The notes under the pieces were generated by a model. That model saw only the letters and a program-made list of their open reading frames with translations. It did no database searches and was not told where the DNA came from. A DNA stretch of 64,000 nucleotides from the sequence record MK250019.1. One strand, written 5' to 3'. The position numbers and the translations under genes are program-made. Below, one piece after another: positions 3,437-57,844 of the stretch (the first letter of the stretch is position 1; the number at the start of each line of letters is the position of its first letter).

Positions 3437-4255
3437 TTAAATAACACATTTTTCACCACAATATGGACAGAACTTAAATTTTGAATTAAGTTTTCTTCCA
3501 CAATTAGTACAATATATTTTATTCAAATCACTTGTCGTATATGGTTTCCTTGATTTAGGAAGAATCTTTATATATTCTGTTTTAAATGGATAATTTTCAA
3601 ATTCATTATTTACTGTTTCAAATTTCTGATTTGAATAACCACCATTTTCAATTCTACCTGTTTCAATAGTAGTATTATTAACATTAGTTTTATATAAAGC
3701 TTTATTATATGTATTTCCATCAATACTTGCACAACAACAGTTAGTAACATTATTTGTTAATAAAACATTATTATTAGTATCTGAACATGTAACTACAGTA
3801 TCATAACTTGGAACAGTATATGTATTTTGATTAGAAATTAATGGACTCTCTTTCCATAAAACATTTAATGTATTATAAATATTTGTTTTAATTCTTGATG
3901 ATACTCTTTCTTTATAAAACTTTACAGTAATATTACCATTATTTGCAATAGCATGTTTTACCTGCACATCATTATCATCTACTTCATAAGTAGAAAATTT
4001 AAATTTAACCTGATTATCCAAATAACGTTCTAACCATACTCTCTCACCTGGTTTCAAAACTAACATACCATCTATATCTTTACCATTAAATGTAAATGTA
4101 ACACCAATAGTAAACTGTTCAGAATTAAATAACTGAATTTCAAATTCATCATTATTGTCCATATAAACAACACGTGAATCTTCATTTGTAGAATACTCTT
4201 TCAAAAGAGATTTGTTAATAGCTAACTAAGCCATCTTCTTTTCATTAATAATCAT
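3437..4255 (-). CDS. C-terminal zinc-ribbon protein (272 aa, code 15)
   Basis: ATG at 4255 (MIINEKKMAQLAINKSLLKEY; TAG at codon 10) in frame with track ORF; C-terminal CTNCG..FCPYCG. Confidence 0.8.
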
Positions 4256-4645
4256 AAGTCATATATAATTTATTTTAAACTTATCTATTAAACTTTCAAT
4301 TCTATACAAAATTTCAAAAGTACTTGAATAATACTCAGTCTAATAGAAATATCATTATCTAATTTTAATTGTAATAGATATAAATTAAAAAATAATTTTT
4401 CAAATATAAATATCTATCTTTAACTTAATATACTATATTAATTATACTACAATATTTATAAAAAGTTTATATTTACTAATAAATTTTAAAAAATAATTTA
4501 ATGAATAAAAAATATTTACATTTCCGAAAGACTTACCTTACTAAATTCATTAAATTATTAAAAATTATAAATAAATTTTTTACATANNNNNNNNNNNNNN
4601 NNNNNNNNNNNNNNNNNNNNNNNNNNNNNNNNNNNNTGAGTTCTG

Positions 4646-4906
4646 AGAAAAAGTCTACATTTTTCTAAATATTTTTAAATTTCATTAAAAATAATTTATA
4701 ACTAATTAATATTCAATAAATTAAATAAATTAAATAAAATATTTTTCATATAAATTAATATAAAATAAAAATTCAGATCTAAATTATATAAATTTAAATC
4801 TGAATTAAAAATAAAATTTTTTCATATATTATATATAATATCTATCTCAANNNNNNNNNNNNNNNNNNNNNNNNNNNNGAGCTTTCTAGAAAAAGTCTAC
4901 ATTTTT
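4646..4906. repeat. 19-bp direct repeat agaaaaagtctacattttt (4646-4664, 4888-4906) in a ~730 bp non-coding, very AT-rich divergent region
   Basis: two identical copies, each just after an N gap; aaaaa/ttttt arms. Confidence 0.7.
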
Positions 4907-5557: not shown

Positions 5558-6079
5558 ATGAATAAGCTACGTAATTTCGAGTTTGAATATAATGGAGAAA
5601 AATATTGGTATTCACGTTCTATAACAGTTGCAACTTGTATTTTCTGTAAGGATTCAGATGGAAATTGGTGTGCATTAATTAATAAAAGAGGTAAAGGTTG
5701 TCCGACTGCTGTTGGAAAGTGGAATGTGCCTGCAGGATATTTGGATCATGATGAAGATATATGTTCATGTGGTATGAGAGAAACATATGAAGAAACAGGT
5801 CTTATTATTCCAAGGGTATTAATGAATTTTTATGCAATTAATTCAATTCCAGATACAAAACGACAAAATGTAAATGTGATATATTATGTTGTTCTTCCTG
5901 GTGTTATTGATGATTATCAGTTAACAACTGAACATTCAGAACCAGATGAAGTAGATGATATAATGTTTATACCAATATCAATGATATTTACATCTGATAT
6001 ACAAATTGCATTTAATAATGATAACATTTTATTGGACGTGTATAATAAGATTATCATTAATCATAATAAAAGTAAGTAA
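5558..6079 (+). CDS. Nudix hydrolase
   Basis: Nudix box GYLDHDEDICSCGMRETYEETGL. Confidence 0.9.
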   Translation: MNKLRNFEFEYNGEKYWYSRSITVATCIFCKDSDGNWCALINKRGKGCPTAVGKWNVPAGYLDHDEDICSCGMRETYEETGLIIPRVLMNFYAINSIPDTKRQNVNVIYYVVLPGVIDDYQLTTEHSEPDEVDDIMFIPISMIFTSDIQIAFNNDNILLDVYNKIIINHNKSK

Positions 6080-6999: not shown

Positions 7000-7656
7000 A
7001 TGAAAAATATAGAAATTTATTTACCAGAATATATTAGACAACATTATATCTTATCATTTATGTATGGTTCATATGTTTATGGTACAAATACAGATAAATC
7101 AGATAAAGATATAATTGTTATCGTTGATGATAATATTGAATTAGAAAATTCTGTTAATGGAATTAAGGAAATTTTCGTAACTGATGGAATAACTGAATAT
7201 GATTTTCAGATTATCAATAACAATACATTCAAAAAGATGCTCTACGAACATCATATAATCGCTGTAGAAAGTTTATTTATGTCATCTGATATGTATTCAA
7301 GTATTGAACTTTTTAACTCGTTATACGCGAAATATTTTATTCTTGATAAATGGAAATTGCGTCAGGTTATTTCAAAAATAGTTGGAAATTCTTATGCGAA
7401 ATGTCATAAGAAGTTAACAGTAGAAAAAGATTATGATTTATATAGATCACAAAAATCATTATATCATTGTATACGATTATATATGTTTGGAATTCAAATA
7501 GGAAAAACAGGAAAGATATATGATTATAGTGAAGCAAATCATTATTTAAAAGAAATATTAGATAAAAAATATTCATGGGAACAATATAAAAAAGAATATA
7601 AACCATTACTTAATAAATTAAGAAGTGAAATGGTTTTATATTGTCCTAAACCATAA
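7000..7656 (+). CDS. Pol-beta-superfamily nucleotidyltransferase
   Basis: YGSYVYGTNTDKSDKD = hG[GS]x9-13DxD signature. Confidence 0.8.
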   Translation: MKNIEIYLPEYIRQHYILSFMYGSYVYGTNTDKSDKDIIVIVDDNIELENSVNGIKEIFVTDGITEYDFQIINNNTFKKMLYEHHIIAVESLFMSSDMYSSIELFNSLYAKYFILDKWKLRQVISKIVGNSYAKCHKKLTVEKDYDLYRSQKSLYHCIRLYMFGIQIGKTGKIYDYSEANHYLKEILDKKYSWEQYKKEYKPLLNKLRSEMVLYCPKP

Positions 7657-8853: not shown

Positions 8854-8986
8854 TAAAAGTAGTTTAAAGTTTAATAATAATTTAATTTTAGTGTGATTAG
8901 AATTTATTTCTAGTCACACTTTTTTATTTTATAATAATTGTGTATCTTTGTAATATAATATATTGTTTAAACATAAGTTATTTAAT

Positions 8987-9313
8987 ATGATAAAATTTAA
9001 AAATCAAACATCAAATAATACTATATCATCAGATGTAATTAAAGATTTAATAGATACATTACCAACTACAAAATCACCAATATTTAAAACGAAGAATTTT
9101 ACTATTCGTGATTTACGTATTGGAAGTATTATACGTATTCATTTATGTAATGATTCCCGTGGTGATAAAGGATATGTTACAACAGAAATTGTTGCATTAT
9201 TTAATTCAATGGGACAACATATATATAATTCTAATGCAGATTTTGCAATTGTATATGAAGGTATAGTATGGACTGCAAATTGTACACAAATAGATAAAAT
9301 AATTTCGTATTAA
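8987..9313 (+). CDS. hypothetical protein
   Basis: ORF downstream of TGTATCTTTG motif. Confidence 0.65.
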   Translation: MIKFKNQTSNNTISSDVIKDLIDTLPTTKSPIFKTKNFTIRDLRIGSIIRIHLCNDSRGDKGYVTTEIVALFNSMGQHIYNSNADFAIVYEGIVWTANCTQIDKIISY

Positions 9314-9374
9314 TTTTTTTATTCAAAAATAAATGTGTATCTTTGAGATGTAACAAATAAAACAATAGAAAATT

Positions 9375-28036: not shown

Positions 28037-28144
28037 AATATTTTTTAAATTGTTAATACTTTATTTTTTTATTTAGGAAATATAGTGTATCTTTGTATTG
28101 TAAAAATAATGAATAAAGTATTAACAATTAAATATATAAAAATT

Positions 28145-34405: not shown

Positions 34406-35902
34406 ATGAATAATACGTATCTTGAAAACGTTATATTCNNNNNNNNNNNNNNNNNNNNNNNNCTTGTTTAGTCATTTAAAGGAAGTTATTTTACTAATCC
34501 TTATTTAAAAACTTTATTTGATATTATTAAACCACATATATTGGAATATAGAGCTGAACCAACTGAACAGCAATCTATAGATTTAGTAAAACTTGCAAAT
34601 AAAGAAGATAAGGTAACAGAAGATCAAATACATGCTTTATGGCAAACAAGAGATATGGTTAGCCAATATACAGATGAATGGTTAAATCAGAATACATAGG
34701 CATTTGGTGAATGGCAAAACCTTATGAGTGGTCTTAGACGTGTTATTGAATATGTAAAAACTATTCAAGCTGATGTTACATTTGAAAATTGTGCAGAGAT
34801 TGTTCAGCATGCGAAATCAATGTTTCAATCAGATACTAATTTTACATTGAACAATTCAAAAGGACATGATTTCTTTGATCCTGTTAATCATAAGCAAACT
34901 GAACTTGAAACTAGAAAGACTGGTTATAATTTTGTTGATCAGTGTTTGAAAGGTGGTTGGGCGAATAAAACATTAAATGTATTTATGGGTTCACCAAAAG
35001 TAGGTAAGTCTATGTGGCTTTGTAATTTATGTGCTAATTCTGTAAGAAATGGAGAGAATTCTGCATATATTACATTGGAGATGGCGTATCAGCTTGTTGC
35101 ACAACGTATCGGTTCAAATCTTTTTAATATTCCTATCGAAGAATATGAAAAAAGTGCTGCAGATGCAAATTTTATGCAACAGAAGATGAAAGAATTTTAT
35201 ATGAATTCACTTATCACACCAGGTAAGTTTATCATAGAAGAATTCCCAACATCATCTGCAACTGTATATGATATAGAATCTTTCTTACTTAAATTAGAGG
35301 AAGAACTTTCTACTGAAGCAAAACCTTTTAAATTTAAGAACATTTTCATTGATTATGTTAATATCATGAAAGATGCGAAGAATCCTAATTCAGAAAGTAC
35401 ATATTTGAAAATTAAGTCTATTTGTGAAGATGTTCGTGCGATGGCACAAAGAAATAACTGGTGTGTTATTTCTTTAACTCAGACAAATAGAACTGCATAT
35501 GATTCAACTGATATTGGTATGAGTAATGTTTCTGAATCTGGTGGTTTGATTGCAACAGTTGATAGTTTATTCGGTATTATTCAATCTTCAATGATGCGTG
35601 TTGATAATACATATTATTTAAAAGCTGTTGCTATTCGAAATTCTGGACATATGGGAGATAAAAAGAAATTTGATTTTAATCCAACATATTTAAGAATTGA
35701 AGAAAATCTTGATGAAAATATTATTCCTGAAAATGTATCACTTGATGGTTTAGTAAAAGATAAACATAAGAATGATAATACAGGAAATAATAATTATCAG
35801 CAATATCCTACAAATGTTGGAGTTCGTCCAAATGTAATAGAATCACCTCAATTAGGATTAACAGAAACACAAATACAGGCACAAGATTTATTTAGCATGT
35901 AA
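34406..35902 (+). CDS. replicative helicase (T4 gp41/DnaB-like), code 15, spans a 24-N gap
   Basis: ATG 34406 in frame via 2 TAG; Walker A GSPKVGKS, ITLEM, IDYVNIM, TQTNR, SESGG. Confidence 0.9.
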
Positions 35903-38386: not shown

Positions 38387-38494
38387 TTAATAAATGATGA
38401 TATTATATTAGAAAAATATGGTATCATCATTTTTTTGTTTTAAAAAATATGTGTATCTTTGTAATGTAATAATTCAATTATAAAAATAAGAAAT

Positions 38495-44293: not shown

Positions 44294-46333
44294 ATGCAAA
44301 AAGGTAATATTGGAGTTACTAGTTAGGATATTTTTCCATTAATCAAGAAATTTATGTATAATGATCAGGATATTTTTATCCGTGAGATCGTAAGTAATGC
44401 AGTTGACGCATCAGAGAAGTTAATTAAAGTTATTAGTGCAAATGAGTATACAGCAAATCCAGATGATTTAAAAGTTACAGTTACTATTAATCATGAAGAT
44501 AATACTATTACTGTTTCTGATATGGGTATTGGTATGACTGCTGATGAAATAGAAAAGTACATTAATCAGATTGCATTTTCAGGAGCAAATGACTTCTTAG
44601 AGAAATATAAGGATACACAGATTATTGGTCATTTTGGACTTGGATTTTATTCAAGCTTTATGGTAAGTTCAAAAGTTGAAATTGTATCAAAGTCATATAA
44701 AGAGAATTCAAAAGCATGTAGATGGACATGTGAAGGAACTACAGAGTTTACACTTAAGGATGATGATAAAGAATCTGTAGGTACCGATGTAATTATGCAT
44801 ATTTCTGATGAATATAAGGAGTATGTAAATGAAAGTAAACTTATGGAACTTTTAAAGAAGTACGCAGAATATTTACCTATTCAAATTTATCTTAAAGATG
44901 TTCCTGCACCAACTACTGATTCATCTACCGGTGAAGTTACATATCCAGAATCACATGAAACAAAAATTACACGAGATGAACCATTGTGGTTAAAATCTGC
45001 ATCAGAACTTAAAGATGAAGATTATATTAAGTTCTATAAGGAAACATTCCCTAATAGACCTGAACCACTTTTCTGGATTCATATTAATATTGATACACCG
45101 TTTACATTTAAGGGAATTCTTTATTTCCCTGCATTTGATCAGAAACATCCTATTTTTGAGCGTAAGCATCTTAATTTGTATTGTAATCGTGTATTTGTGA
45201 CAGATGATGTAGATGGAGTATTACCAGATTATTTGAGTCTTCTTCATGGTGTAATTGACTCTCCTGATATTCCATTGAATGTTTCTCGTTCAGTTCTTCA
45301 AAATGATGCTAATGTTAAGAAGATTAGTTCACATATTACAAATAAGGTTATGAGTTCACTTCGTACACTTATGAAGAAAGATAGAGAAACATATGAGAAA
45401 AAGTGGGAAACAATTAAAACCTTCATTAATCTAGGCGTTGTAACAGAACCTAATATTTTTGATAAAGCAAAGGATATTATTCTTCTTGTTGATACTGATA
45501 ATAAGATGTATACTTTTGATGAATATTATGATAAAGTATCAGAAACACAGAAAGATAAAGATGGTAAAATTGTATATTTGTATACATATGATACTGCTAC
45601 ACAATATACTTATATCGATGCTTTAAAGAAATACGGTTATAATATTCTGCTGTTTAATAGTCAATATGGAGCATTTGAAGTACATACATTTGAAATGAAA
45701 TTACAAGAAAAGAATGTAACATTTAAACGTATTGATGCAGATGTACCAGAAAACCTTATTAAGAAAGAAGAAGATACAACAAAGAAAGAAAAACCTGTAT
45801 CTGAGAATATCAAGAGTATGTTGGTATCTATGTTTGATTGTATTGAGCTAAATCTTCCTAAAATTACACATCAGTATATTGTTCAGCAAGATGGTAAAGA
45901 TGCACTGCCTATTACTATTGTTGCAGATGAGTTCTTCCGTCGTATGAAGGAAATGTCAATGCTTAATAATGCTGGTATGTATTTGGAAAATAATGCATCT
46001 ATTAAGATTATTATTAATGCAGATTCTAAAGTTGTAAAGAAGATTATTAAGATTGCAGAAAAAGAAATTGGTCAGCAAATTAATGATATTAATGAAAAAG
46101 TTAAAGATATTAATACAAGATTGGAAGCTGCTGATACAGATGATGCAAAGAATTCTATTAAAAAAGAACTTGATAACATTATTGCAGAGAAAAAGGAAAT
46201 TATTAATAAACATGCACATGCAGATAGTCATATTCATGAATTAATTGATATTGGTTTGTTACAGTATGGTTTATTATCAGGTGAAGATTTGGCAGCATTT
46301 GTTAAGAGATCTATAAAGATGATTGAAAAGTAA
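44294..46333 (+). CDS. htpG: Hsp90 chaperone HtpG (679 aa, code 15)
   Basis: MQKGNIGVTS-TAG-DIFPLIKKF matches the Bacteroidota HtpG N-terminus; REIVSNAVDA, DMGIGM, IGHFGLGFYS, LNVSR. Confidence 0.95.
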
Positions 46334-50234: not shown

Positions 50235-53200
50235 ATGAAGGTAACAAAACGTGATGGTAGTTTTGAGAATTATAGTGTTTAGACAGTTAAACGTGCAGTT
50301 AGAGAAGCGTTTAAGTCAACAAAGACTAAATACTCAAAAGACACAATTTCGAATATTGTAAGTTCTATTACGCCATATGATGGCATTCCTGTAGAAGAAA
50401 TACAGGATCAGATAGAAACAAGTTTGTATTCTCATGATCAGCCTAAAGTTGCAAAAGAATTTATTCTTTATCGCAATAAGAAGAAGGAAATCAGAGAATG
50501 GGTTGCTAATAAAGAAGCATTTATTGAAAGATATAAAAATGCATCAAATACTGCAAATAGTACAATTGATGATAATTCTAACGTATCATCTAAGAACATC
50601 GGTGTATTAAATGCAGAAATTCATAAAGGTGATAATATTCTTGTAAGTAGAGGAATGATTACAAGAAAATTAAAAGATTTATTCCCTGATTTTAAAGCAA
50701 AACAATATCAAAAAGATTTAAAAAATCATATTATCTATAAGAATGATGAATCAAGTTTTGCTGGTGCTATAAGTCCTTATTGTGTTAGTGTATCTATGTA
50801 TCCATTTCTTAATCATGGATTGGAAAAGATTGGAGGATTGTCATGTCATCCACAAAATCTTGATTCCTATTGTGGTATGTATGTAAATCTTGTATTTGCA
50901 GTTGCAGCACAATTTGCAGGAGCAGTAGCAACATCAGAATTCTTGGTATATTTTGATTATTTTGCACGAAAGGAATTTGGAGATGATTACTATTTGCATA
51001 GTAAAGAATTCTATAAGATTGGTCCAAAATATCGTAAGTTACTTAATGAATCTAATTACTGGTGTAAAGATGTAGATACACTTAGAAAACATGATTTTGG
51101 TACAGATGAATTAAATAAATTGAGAGATGAACTTGTTTATAATTCGGAACGACCATTATCTGATGAAGAACTTAAAGAATATGAAACAGAACTTTCTAAA
51201 TATGATGTAGAAGGTTCAATAAAAGATTTTACAAATCCTATTAAGATTGGTGATGGTACAAGAACTATTGGTTCATGTATACAACAATTCTTCCAACAAG
51301 TAGTGTGAATTGAACGCACCCCTAATCGGTGACGATTAGGTAAACTCCATGTGAATTGCAGGGACTCTAAAATAATGAAGAAAATAATTTAATATTTTGA
51401 TTAAAAATATATACAACTTATTATAAATATTAAAATAATAGTATATATTACATGAAAATTACAGATAATAATATAGATGAAATAAAACATATGTATATTG
51501 ATGAACATCGTTCATATCAAGAAATTGCTGATTATTATAATGCAACAATATCATAGGTTAAAAATTTTTTATAGTCTAGATAGATAAAACGAAGATTTGC
51601 GCAAAGTAAATTAAATCAAGAATAGTTTGATAAAATTAAAGATTTATATTTAGGTGATAAAAAATATCCTGTATCTAAAATTTCAAAAATGTTAAATATA
51701 AAAGAATCAATAATAAGAAATTATATATTTGATAATAAATTAACAAGAAAAGAAACAGGAGATGAACGACGTTTAACAATACCATATGAAACACTATATG
51801 ATTTATATATAATTAAAAAGTTAGATAAAAATGAAATTTAGGAAAAATTAAATATATGTCGACAAACTTTAAATAAAAATTTAAAATTTTATAAATTAAC
51901 CAATAAGTATTCAAATTATACAGATAATGATATTTGTAAAATGTATAAAGATGAATATAAAAGTTTATCAGATATAAATAATATTACAAATTTTCCTAAA
52001 TCACGAATAAGATAGATTTTAATAAAAAATAATATATAGTTACGAGATTATCGTTTAAGTTAGATGACAAAAAGTAAAGCATATTTTGAGTATGATATGA
52101 GTTTATTAAATAAGCAATCTTTATTAAAGCGTAATTGCTATAGTTATTTTAAATCTCATATATCAACACAAATAAAGAAAGAACGAAATATGTGTGAATG
52201 TTGCGGTTCAACAGAAAATTTACATTGTCATCATATTAAACCATATTCATTAATTGTTAATGAGATTATAAAAGAAAATAAAAATTTATCTGATACTGAA
52301 TTATATAATGTAATTACTCATGATTCTAGATTTTTAGATACAAATAATATTAAAGTTGTATGTGAAAAATGTCATTATACGATATTTCATTCATACCTTC
52401 ATTATCAAGGGAATCGTGCAGCCAAGCCTAATAATTAGGAAGGTTCAACGACTATCGAAAACATAGAATAAACAAATAAGAGTTTATTTGAAGAAGTGAG
52501 TAGAGTACATAACAAGTGTTATGGAAGTGCATGGCAACTTAATCTAATCAATTAAGTTGGAGAAATAGTCTAAACGAATTTTTAATTCCCTCTATTACTG
52601 AAATGTAATAGTTGTCTATAGAAATATAGAGCAGTTATAAACTGAATATAAATTAACGATTTATATTTAATATATTTGATTCAATTAACCAACCCGCAGC
52701 AAGTCGTGGTCTGCAATCTGCATTTGTAAATTTCTCTTATTTTGATAAGCCTTTCTTTGAAGGTATGTTTGGGGAATTTGTATTTCCAGATGAAGAAGGT
52801 ACAAGACCTTGTTGGGAAAGTGTTTCATGGTTGCAGAAAGATTTTATGATTTGGTTTAATAAAGAGCGCCTTCGTACTATAATCACTTTCCCTGTTGAAA
52901 GTTTTGCATTGGTATATAAGGATGGAAAGTTTGTAGATGAAGATTCTGCAGATTTTGTTGCAGAAGAATATTCTCGTGGTCATTCATTCTTTACTTATAT
53001 GTCAGATACTGTTGATTCATTATCAAGCTGCTGTTTCGATGGTGATACACCATTTATGTTTGTAGAACCTCTTAATATGGAAGAGCATGGTGGTAATAAT
53101 GCATATATGGTTTCAACTATTAAAGATGCATATGAAAAATATAAAGATGATATAATTAATGTATATCATATGAATTTTAATGGTACTACAGGTAAATGTA

Positions 53201-55791
53201 CAGGTGAATGGGTAAATGCAAAATTTGTAAAAGCACAAGCTATTCAGGAAGTACGAATTTATTTTAAACCAGATGATTTCAATCCAGATGAGTCAAGGAA
53301 TGTAATGAGAGTTACGCCGGATCATATATTCCCTGTTATTGATGATAATGGATTTATTACAGATAAAAATGCATATTTATTACAGACTGGAGATCAACTT
53401 ATTTTTGAATATGCACAATATATGGGATTATTTAGAGATGAATTTCCTGATAGAGATCAAGATTTAGTAAAACGTGCTATTTCAAAAGTTGAAATTGTAA
53501 ATCTTGATGAACCAAAGGATTATTATTGTGTAGAGTTATGTGATAAAAATATTGAACCATACTTTTTGTTACCTAATGGAAATATTACACATAACTGTCG
53601 CCTTAAGAATAAGATTCAAACAAAGGAATTTAATTTTACAAATGGTAACTTAGGGATCAACTTGGGTCCTTTATGTGCTTAATTGCTAATCAAGCAATGT
53701 ATTAATATAGCGATATTAATGCATCGGTGAAGCCTAAACATAAGTTGTGAAACTATATGCATGGTAATACCGAACCAAGTTAATAAATATGTTATAATTT
53801 TACATTTATAATATATGAATAATAAAATATTTACAATTTACAAAATATCATTTCCAAATGGAAAAGTATATATTGGTTAGACATATCATTATCATTAGAG
53901 AATTAAAGAACATTTAAATGAAATGAAACATAGTGATTATAAATTATATAGAGCTATGAGGAAATATAATATAAATGAAAATAATTTTTCTATAGTAGAA
54001 GAAAATATTTTAACATAGAACGATGCAGATAATAAAGAAATATATTATATCAATTTATATGATAGTTATAATAATGGATATAATTCTACATTAGGTGGAC
54101 ATGCTGCAACAATAACAAAAATAGGAGAAGAACATCCTAAAGCTATATTAAATGATAATGAATTATTAGAATTAAGAAAAATTAGATATTCTATGAAATA
54201 TACATTTGGAGAAGTATATGATATGTATAAAAATAAAATGTCAAAAAGTGGTTTTTCAAAATATTGGCATTATTATACAAGACCTGAAATCGGAGAAGAA
54301 TATAATACTGATGAAGTAAATAAATTTTATAAATCTGATAGGAGAACAAGAAGAGGTATATTACATGCAAATTCAAGAAATTTATCAGATGAAGAAGTTT
54401 TAAATATAAGAATACGATATTTTGTAAATGGTGAAAAAGAAGATGATATTTTTAAAAAATATAAACACTTATATTCAAAGAGTGGTTTTAATAAAATATT
54501 ATTTGGATAGTCATATATGCATGTAAAAATGCCTATTAAAACAGATAAGTGTAAATAGAAATTACCATAGTTATCAAAAGAAGAAGTAATTTCATTAAGA
54601 GAACAATATAATAATGGTAAGTCTATTAATGAATTAAAAGTTGGAAAATATGAAAAATATTCAATGAATAATTTTAGAAATATGTTAATAGGTAGAACAT
54701 ATAAAAATTATTAATGTGTGTGGAGGTCATCCCCTAAGTGATGAGCAGGAGGAGTAGGGCTACTATTGATACGTAGCAGTATTTTAGGAAACGAAGTACT
54801 TTAAATGCCGAAATAGTGCAATGTTTATTAACATAATAAACATAAGATATGACCCGGACCATATAGAAATATATGGAGAAAACGTCAAACAGGTTCAAAA
54901 TCTGTAATAACATTAAATCTTAGTCGTATAACACAAGATTGGTTTAATAGTGTTAAGAAAACAGGTGTAACAAAAGAAAATGTAGAAGAACATTATGATG
55001 AATTGTGTCATTATTTTGGTGATATTCTTGATAGAGTATACAAATATCATACTGCATATAATGAACTTCTATGGGATATGTATGATGCTGGTTTGCTTCC
55101 GGTATATAAAGCTGGATTTATTAGTTTGAATAAGCAATATTTAACAATTGGATTAAATGGTCTTAATCAAATGGCAGAATTTTTAGGAATTACATGCAAT
55201 ATAAATCCTCATTATGAAAAATTATGTCAAACAATATTTGGATATATTAAGCAGAAGAATCAAGAAGCTGCAGGTATGTTTAACGGACATAAGCTCACGT
55301 TTAATACCGAGTGCGTACCAGCGGAAAGTCTTGCAATAAAAAATTATAATTGGGATAAAGAAGATGGATATTGGGTAAGTGATGATACAAATCTTTATGC
55401 ATCTTATATTTTTAAACCAAATGACAAGAGCTTATCAATTTTCGATAAAATTACATTACATGGTCGTGATTATATCGGAGATTTCTTAGATGGTGGTTCT
55501 GCGGCTCATCTTAATTTATCAGAGCATTTATCTAAGAAACAAATAAAACATATCATGCAATTTGCAGCACAGGTAGGATGTCAGTATTGGACATTTAATG
55601 TACCTAACTGCAAGTGTGAAGATTGTGGTTACATATCTAAAACACCATTTGATAAGTGTCCAAAATGTGGATCAGTTCATATAAGTTTATATGACCGTAT
55701 CATTGGATATTTAACTAAAATTTCGAACTGGTCAGATGGACGTCAACAAGAACAAAAGACACGTGTTTATCTACATAGTGAAAATATTTAA
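50235..55791 (+). CDS. nrdD: anaerobic (class III) ribonucleoside-triphosphate reductase; exons 50235-51306, 52679-53657, 54885-55791; intein 53032-53595; code 15
   Basis: ATP cone MKVTKRDG (TAG at codon 16); spliced exons total 2958 nt in frame (985 aa precursor, 797 aa after intein removal); joins read QQVVYSINQPAA, LSSCCRL, NLGIQTGS; C-terminal CEDC/CPKC and RIIGYL. Confidence 0.93.
51307..52678 (+). mobile_element. group I intron 1 in nrdD (1372 nt)
   Basis: 5' exon ends U, intron ends G; P1 GUGU|G pairs with CGCAC with U.G at the splice site; AAUCGUGCAGCCAAG element; P7 GACUAU (52450) with AUAGUC (52565). Confidence 0.9.
51452..52471 (+). CDS. intron-encoded HNH homing endonuclease with N-terminal helix-turn-helix-like repeats (339 aa, code 15)
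   Basis: 9 in-frame TAG; CECCGSTENLHCHHIKP...NIKVVCEKCH. Confidence 0.85.
53032..53595 (+). mobile_element. cis mini-intein (188 aa) in NrdD between the two Cys of SSCC
   Basis: starts CFDGDT, VTPDH block B, ends ITHN, +1 Cys; removal restores LSSCCRL. Confidence 0.92.
53658..54884 (+). mobile_element. group I intron 2 in nrdD (1227 nt)
   Basis: exon AGGGAU pairs with GUCCUU with U.G at the splice site; terminal G at 54884; P7 GGUCAU (54725) with AUGACC (54849); join gives GGG AT|T CAA (G-I-Q). Confidence 0.88.
53815..54714 (+). CDS. intron-encoded GIY-YIG homing endonuclease (299 aa, code 15)
   Basis: TIYKISFPNGKVYIG-TAG-T, R..EH, E..YI..YDS.NNGYNST.GG; 5 in-frame TAG. Confidence 0.9.
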
Positions 55792-55815
55792 GTTTTTATA
55801 ACCTATTTTATTTTT

Positions 55816-55858
55816 AATAAGTTATAACATATACTTTATGTTATAACTTATTTTTATT
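55816..55858 (+). terminator. intrinsic terminator after nrdD
   Basis: aataagttataacata...tatgttataacttatt plus T-run. Confidence 0.75.
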
Positions 55859-55922
55859 TAATAGTATTAAAGGTTTATCCTATTATTCAATTAGATAAAT
55901 ATTATAAATGAAAATATAATAT

Positions 55923-56984
55923 ATGAATTATAATAAAATTTATAATAATATTATTAATAATGCAAAAAATCGAAATAATATAAACAATCAATACTTTGAA
56001 ATACATCATATTATCCCTAAATGTATAGGAGGAACTGATGATGATAAAAATTTAGTAAAACTTACATTACGTGAACATTTTATATGTCATGAATTATTAG
56101 TTAAAATATATCCAGATATACAATCATTAAAATGCGCATTATGGATTATTTGTATTACGACATTAGAAGCAAAAAAAGAATATATAACAAATAATATAAA
56201 ATATAAAAATAATAAATTACCTATTAATCATAGAGTACAACATTTTTTAAATGATTTTGAAAAACATATTAATATATCTTCAAGAGATTATGAATATTGT
56301 AGAACATTATATTATATAGCAACAAAAGGGAAAAAACGAACTGTTGAGCAATGTAAAAAAATTTCAGATGCGACAAAGCATGCTATGAAAGATCCATCTA
56401 GAGTACAATTAAGAAGAAAAGGTGTATTGGGTAGTAAATTTTATTATGATTTAATAACAAATAAATCTTATAAATGGTTTCCGGGAGATCCAGATATTGA
56501 TTTAAATAAGTATGCGTGGGGTAGAGGAAAGAAAATGAGTTTAAAATCAAAAACATTAATGTCTGAAAATTTATCAAAATATAAAAAAGTATATTATTAT
56601 AATGATAATTTAAAATCATCTACATGCTTTTGTAAAGATTAGATAAAAATATTACCTGATAGTTGGCATTTAGGAAGAAAATTCGGCGGATATAATAAAA
56701 TGAAAATATTTATTATACCATTATTAAGAAATGTACATTTTAAATTAGTATGTAATTAGCATTTTATTGATAATATATTTTATCATATTAATTTATTAAA
56801 CAAATAGGAAATAAGTATAGGTATATTAACGATTAATGAAAAAATATTAAGTGACTTAATACAAAAAAATATTGATATTAATGATGAAAAATATATTACA
56901 ATAATATATAACAATATATTAAATAATATAAACCAAATTAAAACTATTAATAATAGCGTTTATTTAAATAGTGAAAATATTTAA
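55923..56984 (+). CDS. free-standing HNH homing endonuclease (353 aa, code 15)
   Basis: NYNKIY..FEIHHIIPKCIGGTDDDKNLVKLTLREHF; 3 in-frame TAG; ends VYLNSENI. Confidence 0.85.
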
Positions 56985-57015
56985 GTTTTTATAACCTATT
57001 TTATTTTTAAATTTT

Positions 57016-57050
57016 AATGATTCCAGTATACTACTACTGGAATCATTTTT
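57016..57050 (+). terminator. intrinsic terminator after HNH cassette
   Basis: aatgattccagta...tactggaatcatt plus T-run. Confidence 0.8.
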
Positions 57051-57136
57051 TATTGATTTTTTCTAATAAAAATAGATGTTTTAATCAACTTTTTATATGT
57101 TTTTCTATATAATTTTTAAGAAAAAGATTAAATAGT

Positions 57137-57844
57137 ATGAATTTATTTGATAACGAATTTGATGATATAATTGATTCAGAAACTACATCTTCATCTGTTT
57201 CTACAGAGATGAGAGTTAATGAATTTAAAAAATGGAAGCAAGAAGTATTAAGTTTAAAAAAGAGAAAAGATGATATATATAACCGTAGAAATATAGTTCA
57301 TAATATAGATGATATAATATTAGAAGGAAATTCAGTTACTTTAATTTTTGATTCTAATGTTGAGAAAAATGTTATATTATGCCCTATTAATTATATTATA
57401 TCATGCCCTCTACCGATCAATAATATTAATATAGAAAATAATACAGAAAATGATATACGATTAATTTTATATTCACCAAGAAAATATAATGATTCAAAAT
57501 TAGAAGAAGATATTGTGAATAAAGATGATTTAGAAATGTTATCTCTTATTAACTTTAATAATATGAATATAACAGATATATTATTTAGAGGTACATTTTC
57601 TACATTTGATGATTATCATAAGTATCTAGATATTGTAAAGAACAAATTTAATTATGCTACAATATGGATGAATTACGAAACACGTATAGAACATCCTGAT
57701 ACTACTATAAAACCATTAAAAAGAAATAACTGCCATATATCAGCATTATTGAGATATGATGAATTAATAGATACTATTATTTACAATGATACTGTTAATA
57801 TATCATATTGTAATTTTATTAATAGTGGAATATTGCAAAATTAA
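57137..57844 (+). CDS. hypothetical protein
   Basis: 235 aa ORF. Confidence 0.65.
   Translation: MNLFDNEFDDIIDSETTSSSVSTEMRVNEFKKWKQEVLSLKKRKDDIYNRRNIVHNIDDIILEGNSVTLIFDSNVEKNVILCPINYIISCPLPINNINIENNTENDIRLILYSPRKYNDSKLEEDIVNKDDLEMLSLINFNNMNITDILFRGTFSTFDDYHKYLDIVKNKFNYATIWMNYETRIEHPDTTIKPLKRNNCHISALLRYDELIDTIIYNDTVNISYCNFINSGILQN

What the first reader, a model, noticed from the sequence alone, without database searches (positions are those of the whole stretch)
55765..57010. HNH cassette flanked by a 43-bp perfect duplication of the nrdD stop region; the nuclease has captured NrdD's last residues
Seen: the 3' end of nrdD (VYLHSENI-stop plus 26 nt) recurs 1193 bp downstream as the 3' end of the HNH gene (VYLNSENI-stop), visible only in code 15. 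Each copy is followed by a different terminator hairpin. Inference: insertion by long target duplication or circle integration rather than classical homing. The cassette (terminator, late-type promoter, HNH) could excise precisely by recombination between the repeats without harming nrdD, suggesting a distinct mobility mode.
Basis: partly seen in the sequence, partly recalled or inferred. Interest (0 to 1): 0.75.

Follow-up and report, generated by a model that had tools for sequence, protein, structure and literature searches.

The report
Homing nuclease between duplicated nrdD ends
A selfish nuclease gene sits just behind the anaerobic ribonucleotide reductase gene (nrdD) of a Lak megaphage, between two copies of that gene's last 53 bases. 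Relatives with the empty site exist, and this layout is known from fungal mitochondria but I found no report of it in phages.

Summary
Window 55765-55817 and 56958-57010 are a 53-nt direct repeat with 2 mismatches; the last 43 nt are perfect. The repeat brackets a 1193-bp cassette: hairpin, short leader and a 353-aa HNH gene read with TAG=Gln. The window is Prevotella phage Lak-A2.

Empty-site alleles exist. They carry one repeat copy followed directly by the 57016 terminator. They occur in a close relative (L045) and in Lak-B phages.

The nuclease is Mob-like (T4 family). Its relatives, down to about 40% identity, all lie at the 3' end of nrdD. Its last helix ends at a family-conserved Tyr (Y347), and the LNSENI tail beyond it is NrdD-derived.

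The duplication is old, not an insertion footprint:
- More distant relatives (L107, L111) keep a longer right copy behind an HNH gene with its own stop.
- Other Lak lineages have diverged copies.
- A2's perfect 43 nt comes from a recent left-to-right gene conversion.

The cassette's phylogeny conflicts with that of its flanks, and the cassette is itself mosaic. It therefore moves by recombination.

The best model is a free-standing homing nuclease bracketed by a working and a displaced host-gene end, as in fungal mitochondrial mORFs. Loss by recombination between the repeats is plausible but not shown. Fresh long target duplication and circle integration are not supported.

The parts
54885..55791 (+). 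Last exon of nrdD (anaerobic ribonucleoside-triphosphate reductase), stop at 55789-55791. It contains no in-frame TAG.
   Evidence: NCBIfam TIGR02827 6.7e-76, matching profile positions 353-596 of 596. The exon boundary at 54885 comes from Lak-C1, which lacks the upstream insertion.
55765..55817 (+). Left repeat copy: the last 8 codons of the working nrdD (VYLHSENI), the stop, and 26 nt of 3'UTR.
55816..55852 (+). Cassette-borne hairpin (16-bp perfect stem, 5-nt loop) followed by a T-run. It is the likely terminator for nrdD in filled alleles.
   Evidence: dG -16.2 kcal/mol, z -5.5. A hairpin occupies this position in every cassette variant except L109.
55853..55922 (+). Leader of the HNH gene, with the conserved motif GATAAATATTATAAAT at 55894-55909.
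   Evidence: The motif is kept in A2, L048, L112, L007, L104, L107 and L111 upstream of the ATG. It is not enriched elsewhere in the window. Promoter function is not shown.
55923..56984 (+). Mob-like HNH homing endonuclease gene, 353 aa. In-frame TAG=Gln at 56640, 56757 and 56805. HNH motif at about 55998-56090. Family-specific C-terminal domain at about 56628-56963. The last 6 codons plus stop come from the nrdD tail.
   Evidence: phrog_655 1.9e-39. T4-type Mob hits. Invariant H28 H29 N43 H52 H56 in 19 homologues. C-terminal domain model pLDDT 88, with the last helix ending at Y347.
56958..57010 (+). Right repeat copy: the displaced nrdD end, fused in frame to the HNH gene and still joined to the native terminator.
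   Evidence: In L048 and L007 this copy is identical to the empty-site allele of L045.
57016..57047 (+). Native nrdD terminator hairpin plus T-run. In empty-site alleles it directly follows the single repeat copy.
55818..57010 (+). The 1193 bp that are present in filled alleles and absent from empty-site alleles. An equivalent reading is 55765-56957.
   Evidence: Alignments with L045 (about 5845-5893) and Lak-B3/B1 (L002 about 7113-7160).

Best explanation
This is a free-standing homing-endonuclease cassette of the T4 Mob (HNH) type that lives at the 3' end of nrdD.

Architecture. In the Lak clade the cassette is bracketed by two copies of the nrdD end. The left copy completes the working gene and is followed by a terminator hairpin that belongs to the cassette. 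The right copy is a displaced nrdD end, still attached to the native terminator and the downstream gene.

Origin of the captured tail. The original right copy was longer, from about the NWSDGR codons to the stop, and lay behind an HNH gene with its own stop, as still seen in L107 and L111. In the ancestor of the Lak A/B/C-type cassettes, a deletion of roughly 60-70 nt between the HNH gene's own terminal Val/Ile-Tyr codons and the Val-Tyr codons of the right copy fused the nuclease frame to the last six NrdD codons.

Movement. The cassette spreads and is reshuffled by recombinational repair. nrdD serves as the left homology arm. The right copy, the terminator and the downstream gene serve as the right arm. 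The break is presumably triggered by the nuclease nicking or cutting cassette-free nrdD alleles.

Repeat dynamics. The two copies also recombine with each other. In the A1/A2/C1 lineage, a left-to-right gene conversion of the 3'UTR part produced the perfect 43 bp. Crossing-over between the copies would delete the cassette precisely.

Timing. In-frame TAGs should delay full-length nuclease until the phage's code switch.

Shown: the architecture, the empty sites, the family position, the non-native tail, the conversion, the mosaicism, and the conflict between the cassette's phylogeny and that of its flanks.
Inferred: the cleavage, the deletion-fusion step, the direction of spread, and excision.
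For: - Empty sites: a single copy followed by the native terminator in L045 (94-97% identical flanks) and in Lak-B1/B3, L008 and L009.
- Patchy distribution: only 2 of 80 nrdD-bearing viral contigs carry the gene.
- Family position: every homologue examined, from 95% down to 41% identity and including non-recoded phages, lies directly 3' of nrdD. In L109 it lies between nrdD and a radical-SAM activase.
- Catalytic HNH residues are invariant.
- The tail is not native. Family C-termini share ..IKxxNxxxY and then vary. The predicted last helix ends at Y347 and residues 351-353 have pLDDT below 50. In L110 the tail has decayed to AYLC-stop.
- Older, longer duplication: L107 has a 66-nt right copy with 5 mismatches directly after the HNH stop. 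L111 has a comparable right copy, cut off by the contig end. L106 has none.
- Diverged copies in relatives (left/right tail): L112 PSDNI/NSENI, L105 PSDNI/NDENI, L104 NKESI/SKDNI.
- Gene conversion: the right copies of L048 and L007 match the L045 empty allele, while the right copy of A2/A1/C1 matches its own left copy up to the repeat boundary.
- Horizontal exchange: compared with A2, L105 has flanks at 89-93% identity but HNH at 82-84%. L101 and L104 have flanks at 69-87% but HNH at 87-88%. The 5' half of the HNH gene occurs as two alleles about 13% apart in genomes whose 3' half is 98% identical.
- Precedents: fungal mitochondrial mORFs with an inserted C-terminus plus a displaced native C-terminus (PMC3630166). 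T4 mobC at nrdG/nrdD, and nicking by MobA and MobE (PMC2988022).
Against: - No cleavage site or nuclease activity is known.
- If the target lies inside the repeat or at the intact IGY|LTK region, filled genomes should cut themselves. How they would be immune is unexplained.
- Which copy travels with the nuclease cannot be settled. The right copy is fused to HNH, and the HNH 3' half is 98% identical in four genomes whose left tails differ.
- In L101 both copies carry the Lak-B-type tail (PKENI). This needs either a same-lineage donor or a further conversion.
- The deletion-fusion step is a parsimony argument.
Confidence: 0.6

Rival explanations
1. Long target-site duplication made afresh at each insertion. 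Two staggered nicks about 50 nt apart in the nrdD end are filled in, so both copies are the recipient's own sequence.
For: In A2 and in L101 both copies carry the lineage-specific tail and 3'UTR. Mob-type HNH enzymes are nickases (PMC2988022).
Against: The copies differ in L048, L007, L112, L105, L104 and L107, and the right one equals the empty allele. The right junction (HNH ..NNS-VY|L..) is the same in all Lak-type cassettes. The duplication is longer in L107 and L111. A2's identity is explained by a conversion that happened after its split from L048. The right tail is part of the nuclease ORF, so it is inherited with it.
Confidence: 0.07
2. The cassette moves as a circle. It excises by recombination between the repeats and re-integrates Campbell-style through the single repeat it then carries.
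For: The repeats are direct and demonstrably interact. Empty alleles equal the expected excision product. The chimeric pattern in L007 and L048 is compatible with a crossover inside the repeat.
Against: The 1193 bp contain no recombinase or replication function. No circle-junction or A2-type excision-junction sequence was found in IMG/VR (low power). Flank-homology recombination explains the mosaics, whose endpoints lie inside the HNH gene. Homologues without any duplication sit at the same site (L106, L108).
Confidence: 0.1
3. Origin by release from a group I intron. The nuclease was once encoded at the 3' end of the intron that sits at the IGY|LTK site of nrdD, and the right copy is the former exon 2. 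An intron-less nrdD end was later placed upstream.
For: In L107 and L111 the right copy starts at or just upstream of the NWSDG codons, close to the site where ORF-less introns sit in Lak-B and L107. Among the Lak-B-like genomes examined, the intron-bearing ones (B1, B3, L008, L009) lack the cassette and the intron-less L101 has it.
Against: No cassette has intron core sequence directly upstream of HNH. Rfam finds no intron in the window. The most distant family members are free-standing behind an uninterrupted nrdD end.
Confidence: 0.15
4. Assembly artefact or chance repeat.
For: None beyond the AT-richness of the sequence.
Against: The same structure is present in the curated Lak-A1, A2 and C1 genomes and at least 7 independent assemblies. 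It is the only such repeat in the window.
Confidence: 0.01

Closest known systems
T4 Mob family of free-standing HNH homing endonucleases (MobA-E; mobC lies between nrdG and nrdD; MobA and MobE nick)
   Same: HNH N-terminal nuclease followed by a distinct C-terminal region. A free-standing ORF beside a ribonucleotide reductase gene. Patchy presence among close relatives. About 35% identity to T-even Mob-like genes (PMC2988022).
   Different: The best T-even match is mobB-like, not mobC. The roughly 110-aa C-terminal domain is specific to the nrdD-associated family and has no PDB match. The review of T4 mobile elements I read (PMC2988022) mentions no host-gene-end duplication or host-derived tail for T4 mob genes; I did not inspect the T4 sequences myself. 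This gene needs TAG read-through.
Fungal mitochondrial mobile ORFs (mORFs) with carboxy-terminal duplication (Allomyces macrogynus atp6; Glomus atp6, atp9, cox2, nad3)
   Same: An endonuclease ORF at the 3' end of a host gene. The upstream copy of the gene end completes the gene, and the native end is displaced downstream. The copies can differ and come from different lineages. The ORF is sometimes in phase with the native end (PMC3630166, PMC6279837).
   Different: Those are LAGLIDADG or GIY-YIG enzymes in organelles, whereas this is an HNH enzyme in a phage. Here the duplication is short (53 nt; 66 nt in L107), includes the stop and 3'UTR, and the cassette brings its own terminator. The copies are homogenised by gene conversion in some lineages. 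Which copy is foreign is unresolved.
Collaborative homing: free-standing F-CphI beside psbA with an ORF-less intron in cyanophage S-PM2 (recalled from memory, not checked here)
   Same: A free-standing nuclease just downstream of the target gene, and an ORF-less group I-like insertion near that gene's 3' end in some relatives (Lak-B, L107).
   Different: No evidence here that the nuclease cuts the intron insertion site. A2 has the nuclease but no intron at that site.
Recoded intron endonuclease in Agate phages (bioRxiv 10.1101/2021.08.26.457843)
   Same: A homing endonuclease inside an early gene region carries in-frame recoded stops, which are proposed to delay its synthesis.
   Different: That case is TGA=Trp and intron-borne. 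Here it is TAG=Gln and free-standing, alongside two further recoded nuclease genes within nrdD.

Membership tests
HNH homing endonuclease, Mob-like (PHROG 655) | HNH catalytic motif (His...Asn...His) intact | tested here: met
   phrog_655 1.9e-39 over residues 1-240. H28, H29, N43, H52 and H56 are invariant in 19 homologues.
HNH homing endonuclease, Mob-like (PHROG 655) | Free-standing ORF next to a conserved target gene, at the same site in different genomes | tested here: met
   All 13 family contexts examined lie directly 3' of nrdD.
HNH homing endonuclease, Mob-like (PHROG 655) | Presence/absence polymorphism among close relatives, and a phylogeny that conflicts with the flanks | tested here: met
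   Empty alleles in L045 and Lak-B. Only 2 of 80 loci are filled. The rank order of identities reverses between HNH and flanks.
HNH homing endonuclease, Mob-like (PHROG 655) | Site-specific nicking or cleavage of the cassette-free allele, and biased inheritance in mixed infection | not testable with these tools
   Needs enzyme assays or phage crosses. No Lak phage is in culture, to my knowledge.
mORF-type element with host-gene C-terminal duplication | Two copies of the host gene's 3' end bracket the endonuclease ORF, and the upstream copy completes the gene | tested here: met
mORF-type element with host-gene C-terminal duplication | The downstream copy is the native end (matches the empty allele of relatives) and decays | tested here: met
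   The right copies of L048 and L007 equal the L045 empty allele. The right copy carries a CAG>TAG change in L107, short deletions in L111 and a premature stop in L110.
mORF-type element with host-gene C-terminal duplication | The upstream copy is foreign and arrived with the element | tested here: inconclusive
   In L112 (A-like flanks) the left tail is PSDNI, while its right tail and the A-like empty allele are NSENI. However, the right tail is fused to HNH, and the HNH 3' half is 98% identical across genomes with different left tails.
Transposon-type insertion with target-site duplication | Duplication created at insertion, so identical at birth and independent at each event, plus a transposase | tested here: not met
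   No transposase. The copies are unequal in most relatives. The junction is shared across lineages. The older form is longer.
Integrative circle (Campbell-type) | A recombinase, and detectable circle or excision junctions | tested here: not met
   No recombinase gene in the cassette. There were 0 hits for the junction patterns in IMG/VR.
Group I intron-encoded endonuclease | The ORF lies within a self-splicing intron that interrupts the gene | tested here: not met
   The cassette lies after the nrdD stop codon. No Rfam intron match.

The most novel reading that the evidence does not exclude
The duplicated gene end is a working part of the element, not a scar. It would be a phage counterpart of mitochondrial mORFs, in which a free-standing nuclease carries a spare end and a terminator for its host gene. 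That would let it sit at, or invade, the coding 3' end without an intron or intein. The two copies would also give it a built-in route to precise, reversible loss and to self-homogenisation, possibly driven by the nuclease cutting its own repeats.
Probability: 0.3. Interest if true: 0.7.

Novelty: new variant of a known kind. Interest (0 to 1): 0.55.

Why it matters
Homing endonuclease genes are thought to stay harmless in three ways: hiding in introns, hiding in inteins, or sitting between genes. A gene-end duplication is a fourth way, so far documented in fungal mitochondria. Finding it in a half-megabase gut phage, in several evolutionary stages, has three consequences:
- The solution is general. 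The stages run from a long duplicate, to a fused tail, to homogenised repeats, to the empty site.
- It gives a natural series for studying how such elements are gained, maintained and lost.
- It explains a mis-annotation trap: a nuclease that appears to share its C-terminus with NrdD.

It also adds to evidence that recoded stops gate selfish nucleases to late infection.

Tried and rejected
- Reads. The look-up of sequencing runs found 19 holder runs, all kept as Logan contigs. No read-level test of excision, circles or heterogeneity was therefore possible. Later searches used P0001:1-84, P0001:106-353, P0001:236-353 or other family members. One local MAFFT alignment in the Python box included the whole gene. 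The genome search fetched locus L115, whose last bases overlap those places; that locus was not sent to any tool.
- Junction patterns. Exact patterns for an A2-type excision junction and for a circle junction gave 0 hits in IMG/VR. A pattern for A-like empty alleles found only the L045 contig again.
- The metagenome scan gave one truncated hit.
- Paralogues in Lak-A2. The HNH gene and the two other nrdD-borne nucleases are each single-copy. The only other weak HNH hit has no flanking repeat. So 'other HNH genes ending in neighbouring gene ends' could not be tested within this genome.
- 'Late-type promoter'. The conserved leader motif occurs once exactly in the window and is not enriched. The sigma-70 scan is no better than shuffles.
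- Rfam finds no group I intron in the window.
- The C-terminal domain has no convincing PDB match (Foldseek E > 7; VIA-align best Z 3.9).
- Whether the L045 and Lak-B empty alleles are never-invaded or excision products cannot be decided, because both predict the same sequence.
Full report
**What is there**

The window is Prevotella phage Lak-A2: positions 52700-57200 match MK250019.1 at 100% identity. At 55765-55817 and 56958-57010 there is a 53-nt direct repeat with two mismatches near its 5' end and a perfect last 43 nt, spaced 1193 bp. No comparable repeat exists elsewhere in the 64 kb.

The left copy holds the last eight codons of nrdD, the stop and 26 nt of 3'UTR. The ORF 55003-55791 matches NrdD models to the very end of the profile, which stops at the Tyr of RVY. 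The LHSENI tail therefore lies beyond conserved NrdD.

The right copy closes a 353-aa ORF (55923-56984). This ORF is open only if three TAGs are read as Gln. That reading is warranted for three reasons:
- Lak phages are published TAG-recoded phages (PMC6784885).
- A neighbouring 1013-aa ORF has 18 in-frame TAGs.
- The sequence behind the TAGs is conserved in homologues, some of which come from phages that need no recoding.

Each copy is followed by its own strong hairpin and T-run.

**What the gene is**

The ORF is an HNH homing endonuclease of the T4 Mob type:
- It matches phrog_655 at 1.9e-39.
- It has about 35% identity to T-even Mob-like genes, and the best match is mobB-like in RB32.
- The catalytic His/Asn/His positions are invariant.

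A database search found full-length relatives of 335-356 aa, down to 36% identity. The last ~110 residues, behind the first TAG, form a conserved domain. A model of that domain is confident (pLDDT 88, pTM 0.82) and mostly helical, but has no convincing PDB match.

The last helix of the model ends at Y347, the family-conserved Tyr of ..IKxxNxxxY. The six residues after it (LNSENI) are poorly predicted and are not conserved in the family.

**Where the family lives**

Every family member whose contig I fetched lies directly 3' of nrdD. This covers 13 contexts, from 99% down to 41% identity. It includes non-recoded phages, among them one where the gene lies between nrdD and a radical-SAM activase. 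That is the position of T4 mobC (PMC2988022).

The gene is single-copy in Lak-A2. It is present in only 2 of 80 nrdD-bearing IMG/VR loci.

**Empty sites**

Lak-B1 and Lak-B3 (and L008, L009) carry one copy of the repeat, followed directly by the 57016-type terminator and the downstream gene. A much closer relative, L045, does the same; its flanks are 94-97% identical to A2.

**The duplication is old, not a fresh footprint**

- In L107 (HNH 59% identical) the nuclease has its own stop. It is followed by a 66-nt copy of the nrdD end (NWSDGR... to the stop) that differs at 5 positions from the working end upstream.
- L111 (71% identical) has a comparable right copy, with small deletions and cut off by the contig end.
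- L106 (65% identical) has no right copy.
- In the Lak-type cassettes the right copy starts at the Val-Tyr codons and is fused in frame to the nuclease.

The simplest path from the long form to the fused form is a 60-70-nt deletion. It would run between the nuclease's own terminal Val/Ile-Tyr codons and the Val-Tyr codons of the right copy. This step is inferred.

The fused tail is dispensable. In L110 it has decayed to AYLC-stop.

The two copies often differ:

| Genome | Left tail | Right tail |
|---|---|---|
| L112 | PSDNI | NSENI |
| L105 | PSDNI | NDENI |
| L104 | NKESI | SKDNI |

**Why A2's copies are identical**

L048 is 98.7% identical to A2. In L048 and in L007 the right copy has the 3'UTR version seen in the empty L045 allele. 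The left copy has a different version, with two substitutions and an extra T.

In A2, A1 and C1 the right copy carries the left-copy version up to the exact end of the repeat. The two 5' mismatches remain. L112 and L105 also have the L045-type right copy.

So A2's perfect 43 nt is a recent left-to-right gene conversion. This is direct evidence that the repeats recombine with each other.

**Mobility**

Cassette and flanks disagree:

| Genome | Flank identity to A2 | HNH identity to A2 |
|---|---|---|
| L105 | 89-93% | 82-84% |
| L101, L104 | 69-87% | 87-88% |

Within the A-like group the 3' half of the HNH gene is 98% identical. The hairpin, the leader and the first ~155 codons occur as two alleles about 13% apart, and L112 is intermediate. 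The cassette is therefore exchanged and recombined among co-circulating Lak phages, and some tract ends fall inside the gene. Extensive homologous recombination in Lak-B has been reported (PMC6784885).

**Mechanism proposed**

I propose a free-standing homing nuclease whose neighbourhood supplies both homology arms. nrdD is the left arm; the right copy, the native terminator and the downstream gene form the right arm.

The cassette brings a terminator for nrdD, and the left copy keeps nrdD intact. This is the layout of fungal mitochondrial mORFs, which have an inserted C-terminus plus a displaced native C-terminus (PMC3630166, PMC6279837).

Crossing-over between the copies would delete the cassette precisely. 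This is plausible given the conversion, but it is unproven.

Three points remain open:
- Which copy travels with the nuclease.
- Where the enzyme cuts.
- How filled genomes avoid self-cleavage.

**Rivals**

- Fresh long target duplication and circle integration are disfavoured. The copies are unequal in most relatives, all Lak-type cassettes share one junction, an older and longer form exists, and the cassette has no recombinase. No junction sequences were found, although that search had low power.
- An origin by release from the group I-like intron at the IGY|LTK site is possible. ORF-less copies of that intron sit there in Lak-B and L107. The most distant family members do not support this origin.

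**Limits**

I worked beside those positions afterwards.

**Novelty**

The Lak papers I searched do not mention these nucleases. Full-text searches found gene-end duplications with homing nucleases only in organelles. I rate this a new variant of a known kind, of moderate interest.

Noticed in passing
window 50235-55791: nrdD is a mosaic of at least three further selfish elements. (a) An insertion of about 51309-52764 carries an HNH ORF (51452-52471, 9 in-frame TAGs). (b) A 188-aa mini-intein at 53032-53595 (CFDGD...THN|C) sits inside the SSCC/RL motif. (c) An insertion of about 53654-54884 carries a GIY-YIG ORF (53815-54714, 6 TAGs) and is absent from Lak-C1, L007 and L048. The exon ends in T and the insert ends in G, as in group I introns, but Rfam gives no intron hit.
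   Followed up: partly
window 51452-52471, 53815-54714, 55923-56984: All three nuclease genes in or next to nrdD carry in-frame TAGs, while the two nrdD ORFs checked (52765-53682 and 55003-55791) carry none. The first-exon ORF (50235-51308) has one TAG, probably beyond the exon end. The host gene can be translated under the standard code. Full-length nucleases should appear only after the phage's TAG=Gln switch. The same idea was proposed for an Agate-phage intron endonuclease (bioRxiv 10.1101/2021.08.26.457843).
   Followed up: partly
L002 6813-7049 (Lak-B3), L107 about 3593-3836; equivalent to window about 55715: An ORF-less, group I-like insertion of about 240 nt sits in the Tyr codon of ..DRIIGY|LTKIS.., 75 nt before the nrdD stop. 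Among the Lak-B-like genomes examined, the intron-bearing ones (B1, B3, L008, L009) lack the HNH cassette and the intron-less L101 has it. L107 has both. This may reflect interplay between the two, such as protection or co-conversion.
   Followed up: partly
window 55494/55495 (L048 4493-4777; L045 4493-5574) and about 55370/55384 (Lak-B1, L003 6474-7235): Relatives have further variable insertions in the last nrdD exon: 285 nt in L048, 1083 nt in L045 and about 760 nt in Lak-B1. Part of each of the first two resembles window 53703-53772, the start of the GIY-YIG insertion.
   Followed up: no
window 44294-46333 (+): A phage-encoded HtpG/Hsp90 chaperone. NCBIfam NF003555 scores 559 bits, above the curated cut-off of 371, with full-length coverage.
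   Followed up: partly
window 8917-8960, 9312-9355, 28062-28105, 38428-38471: A four-copy 44-nt motif: a T-run followed by ..GTGTATCTTTGTAATGTAATA. It contains TAnnTTTG, which resembles the Bacteroidetes -7 promoter element, so these may be host-polymerase (early) promoters.
   Followed up: no
window 55607-55645: A2 shares a patch of synonymous variants with the empty-site relative L045, against its closest relatives C1, L048 and L007. This small recombination patch in nrdD lies about 150 nt upstream of the cassette.
   Followed up: no
window about 4599-4640, 4851-4878, 34439-34462: Runs of N (masked or gaps). They create spurious repeat families in the repeat finder. I left them untouched.
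   Followed up: no
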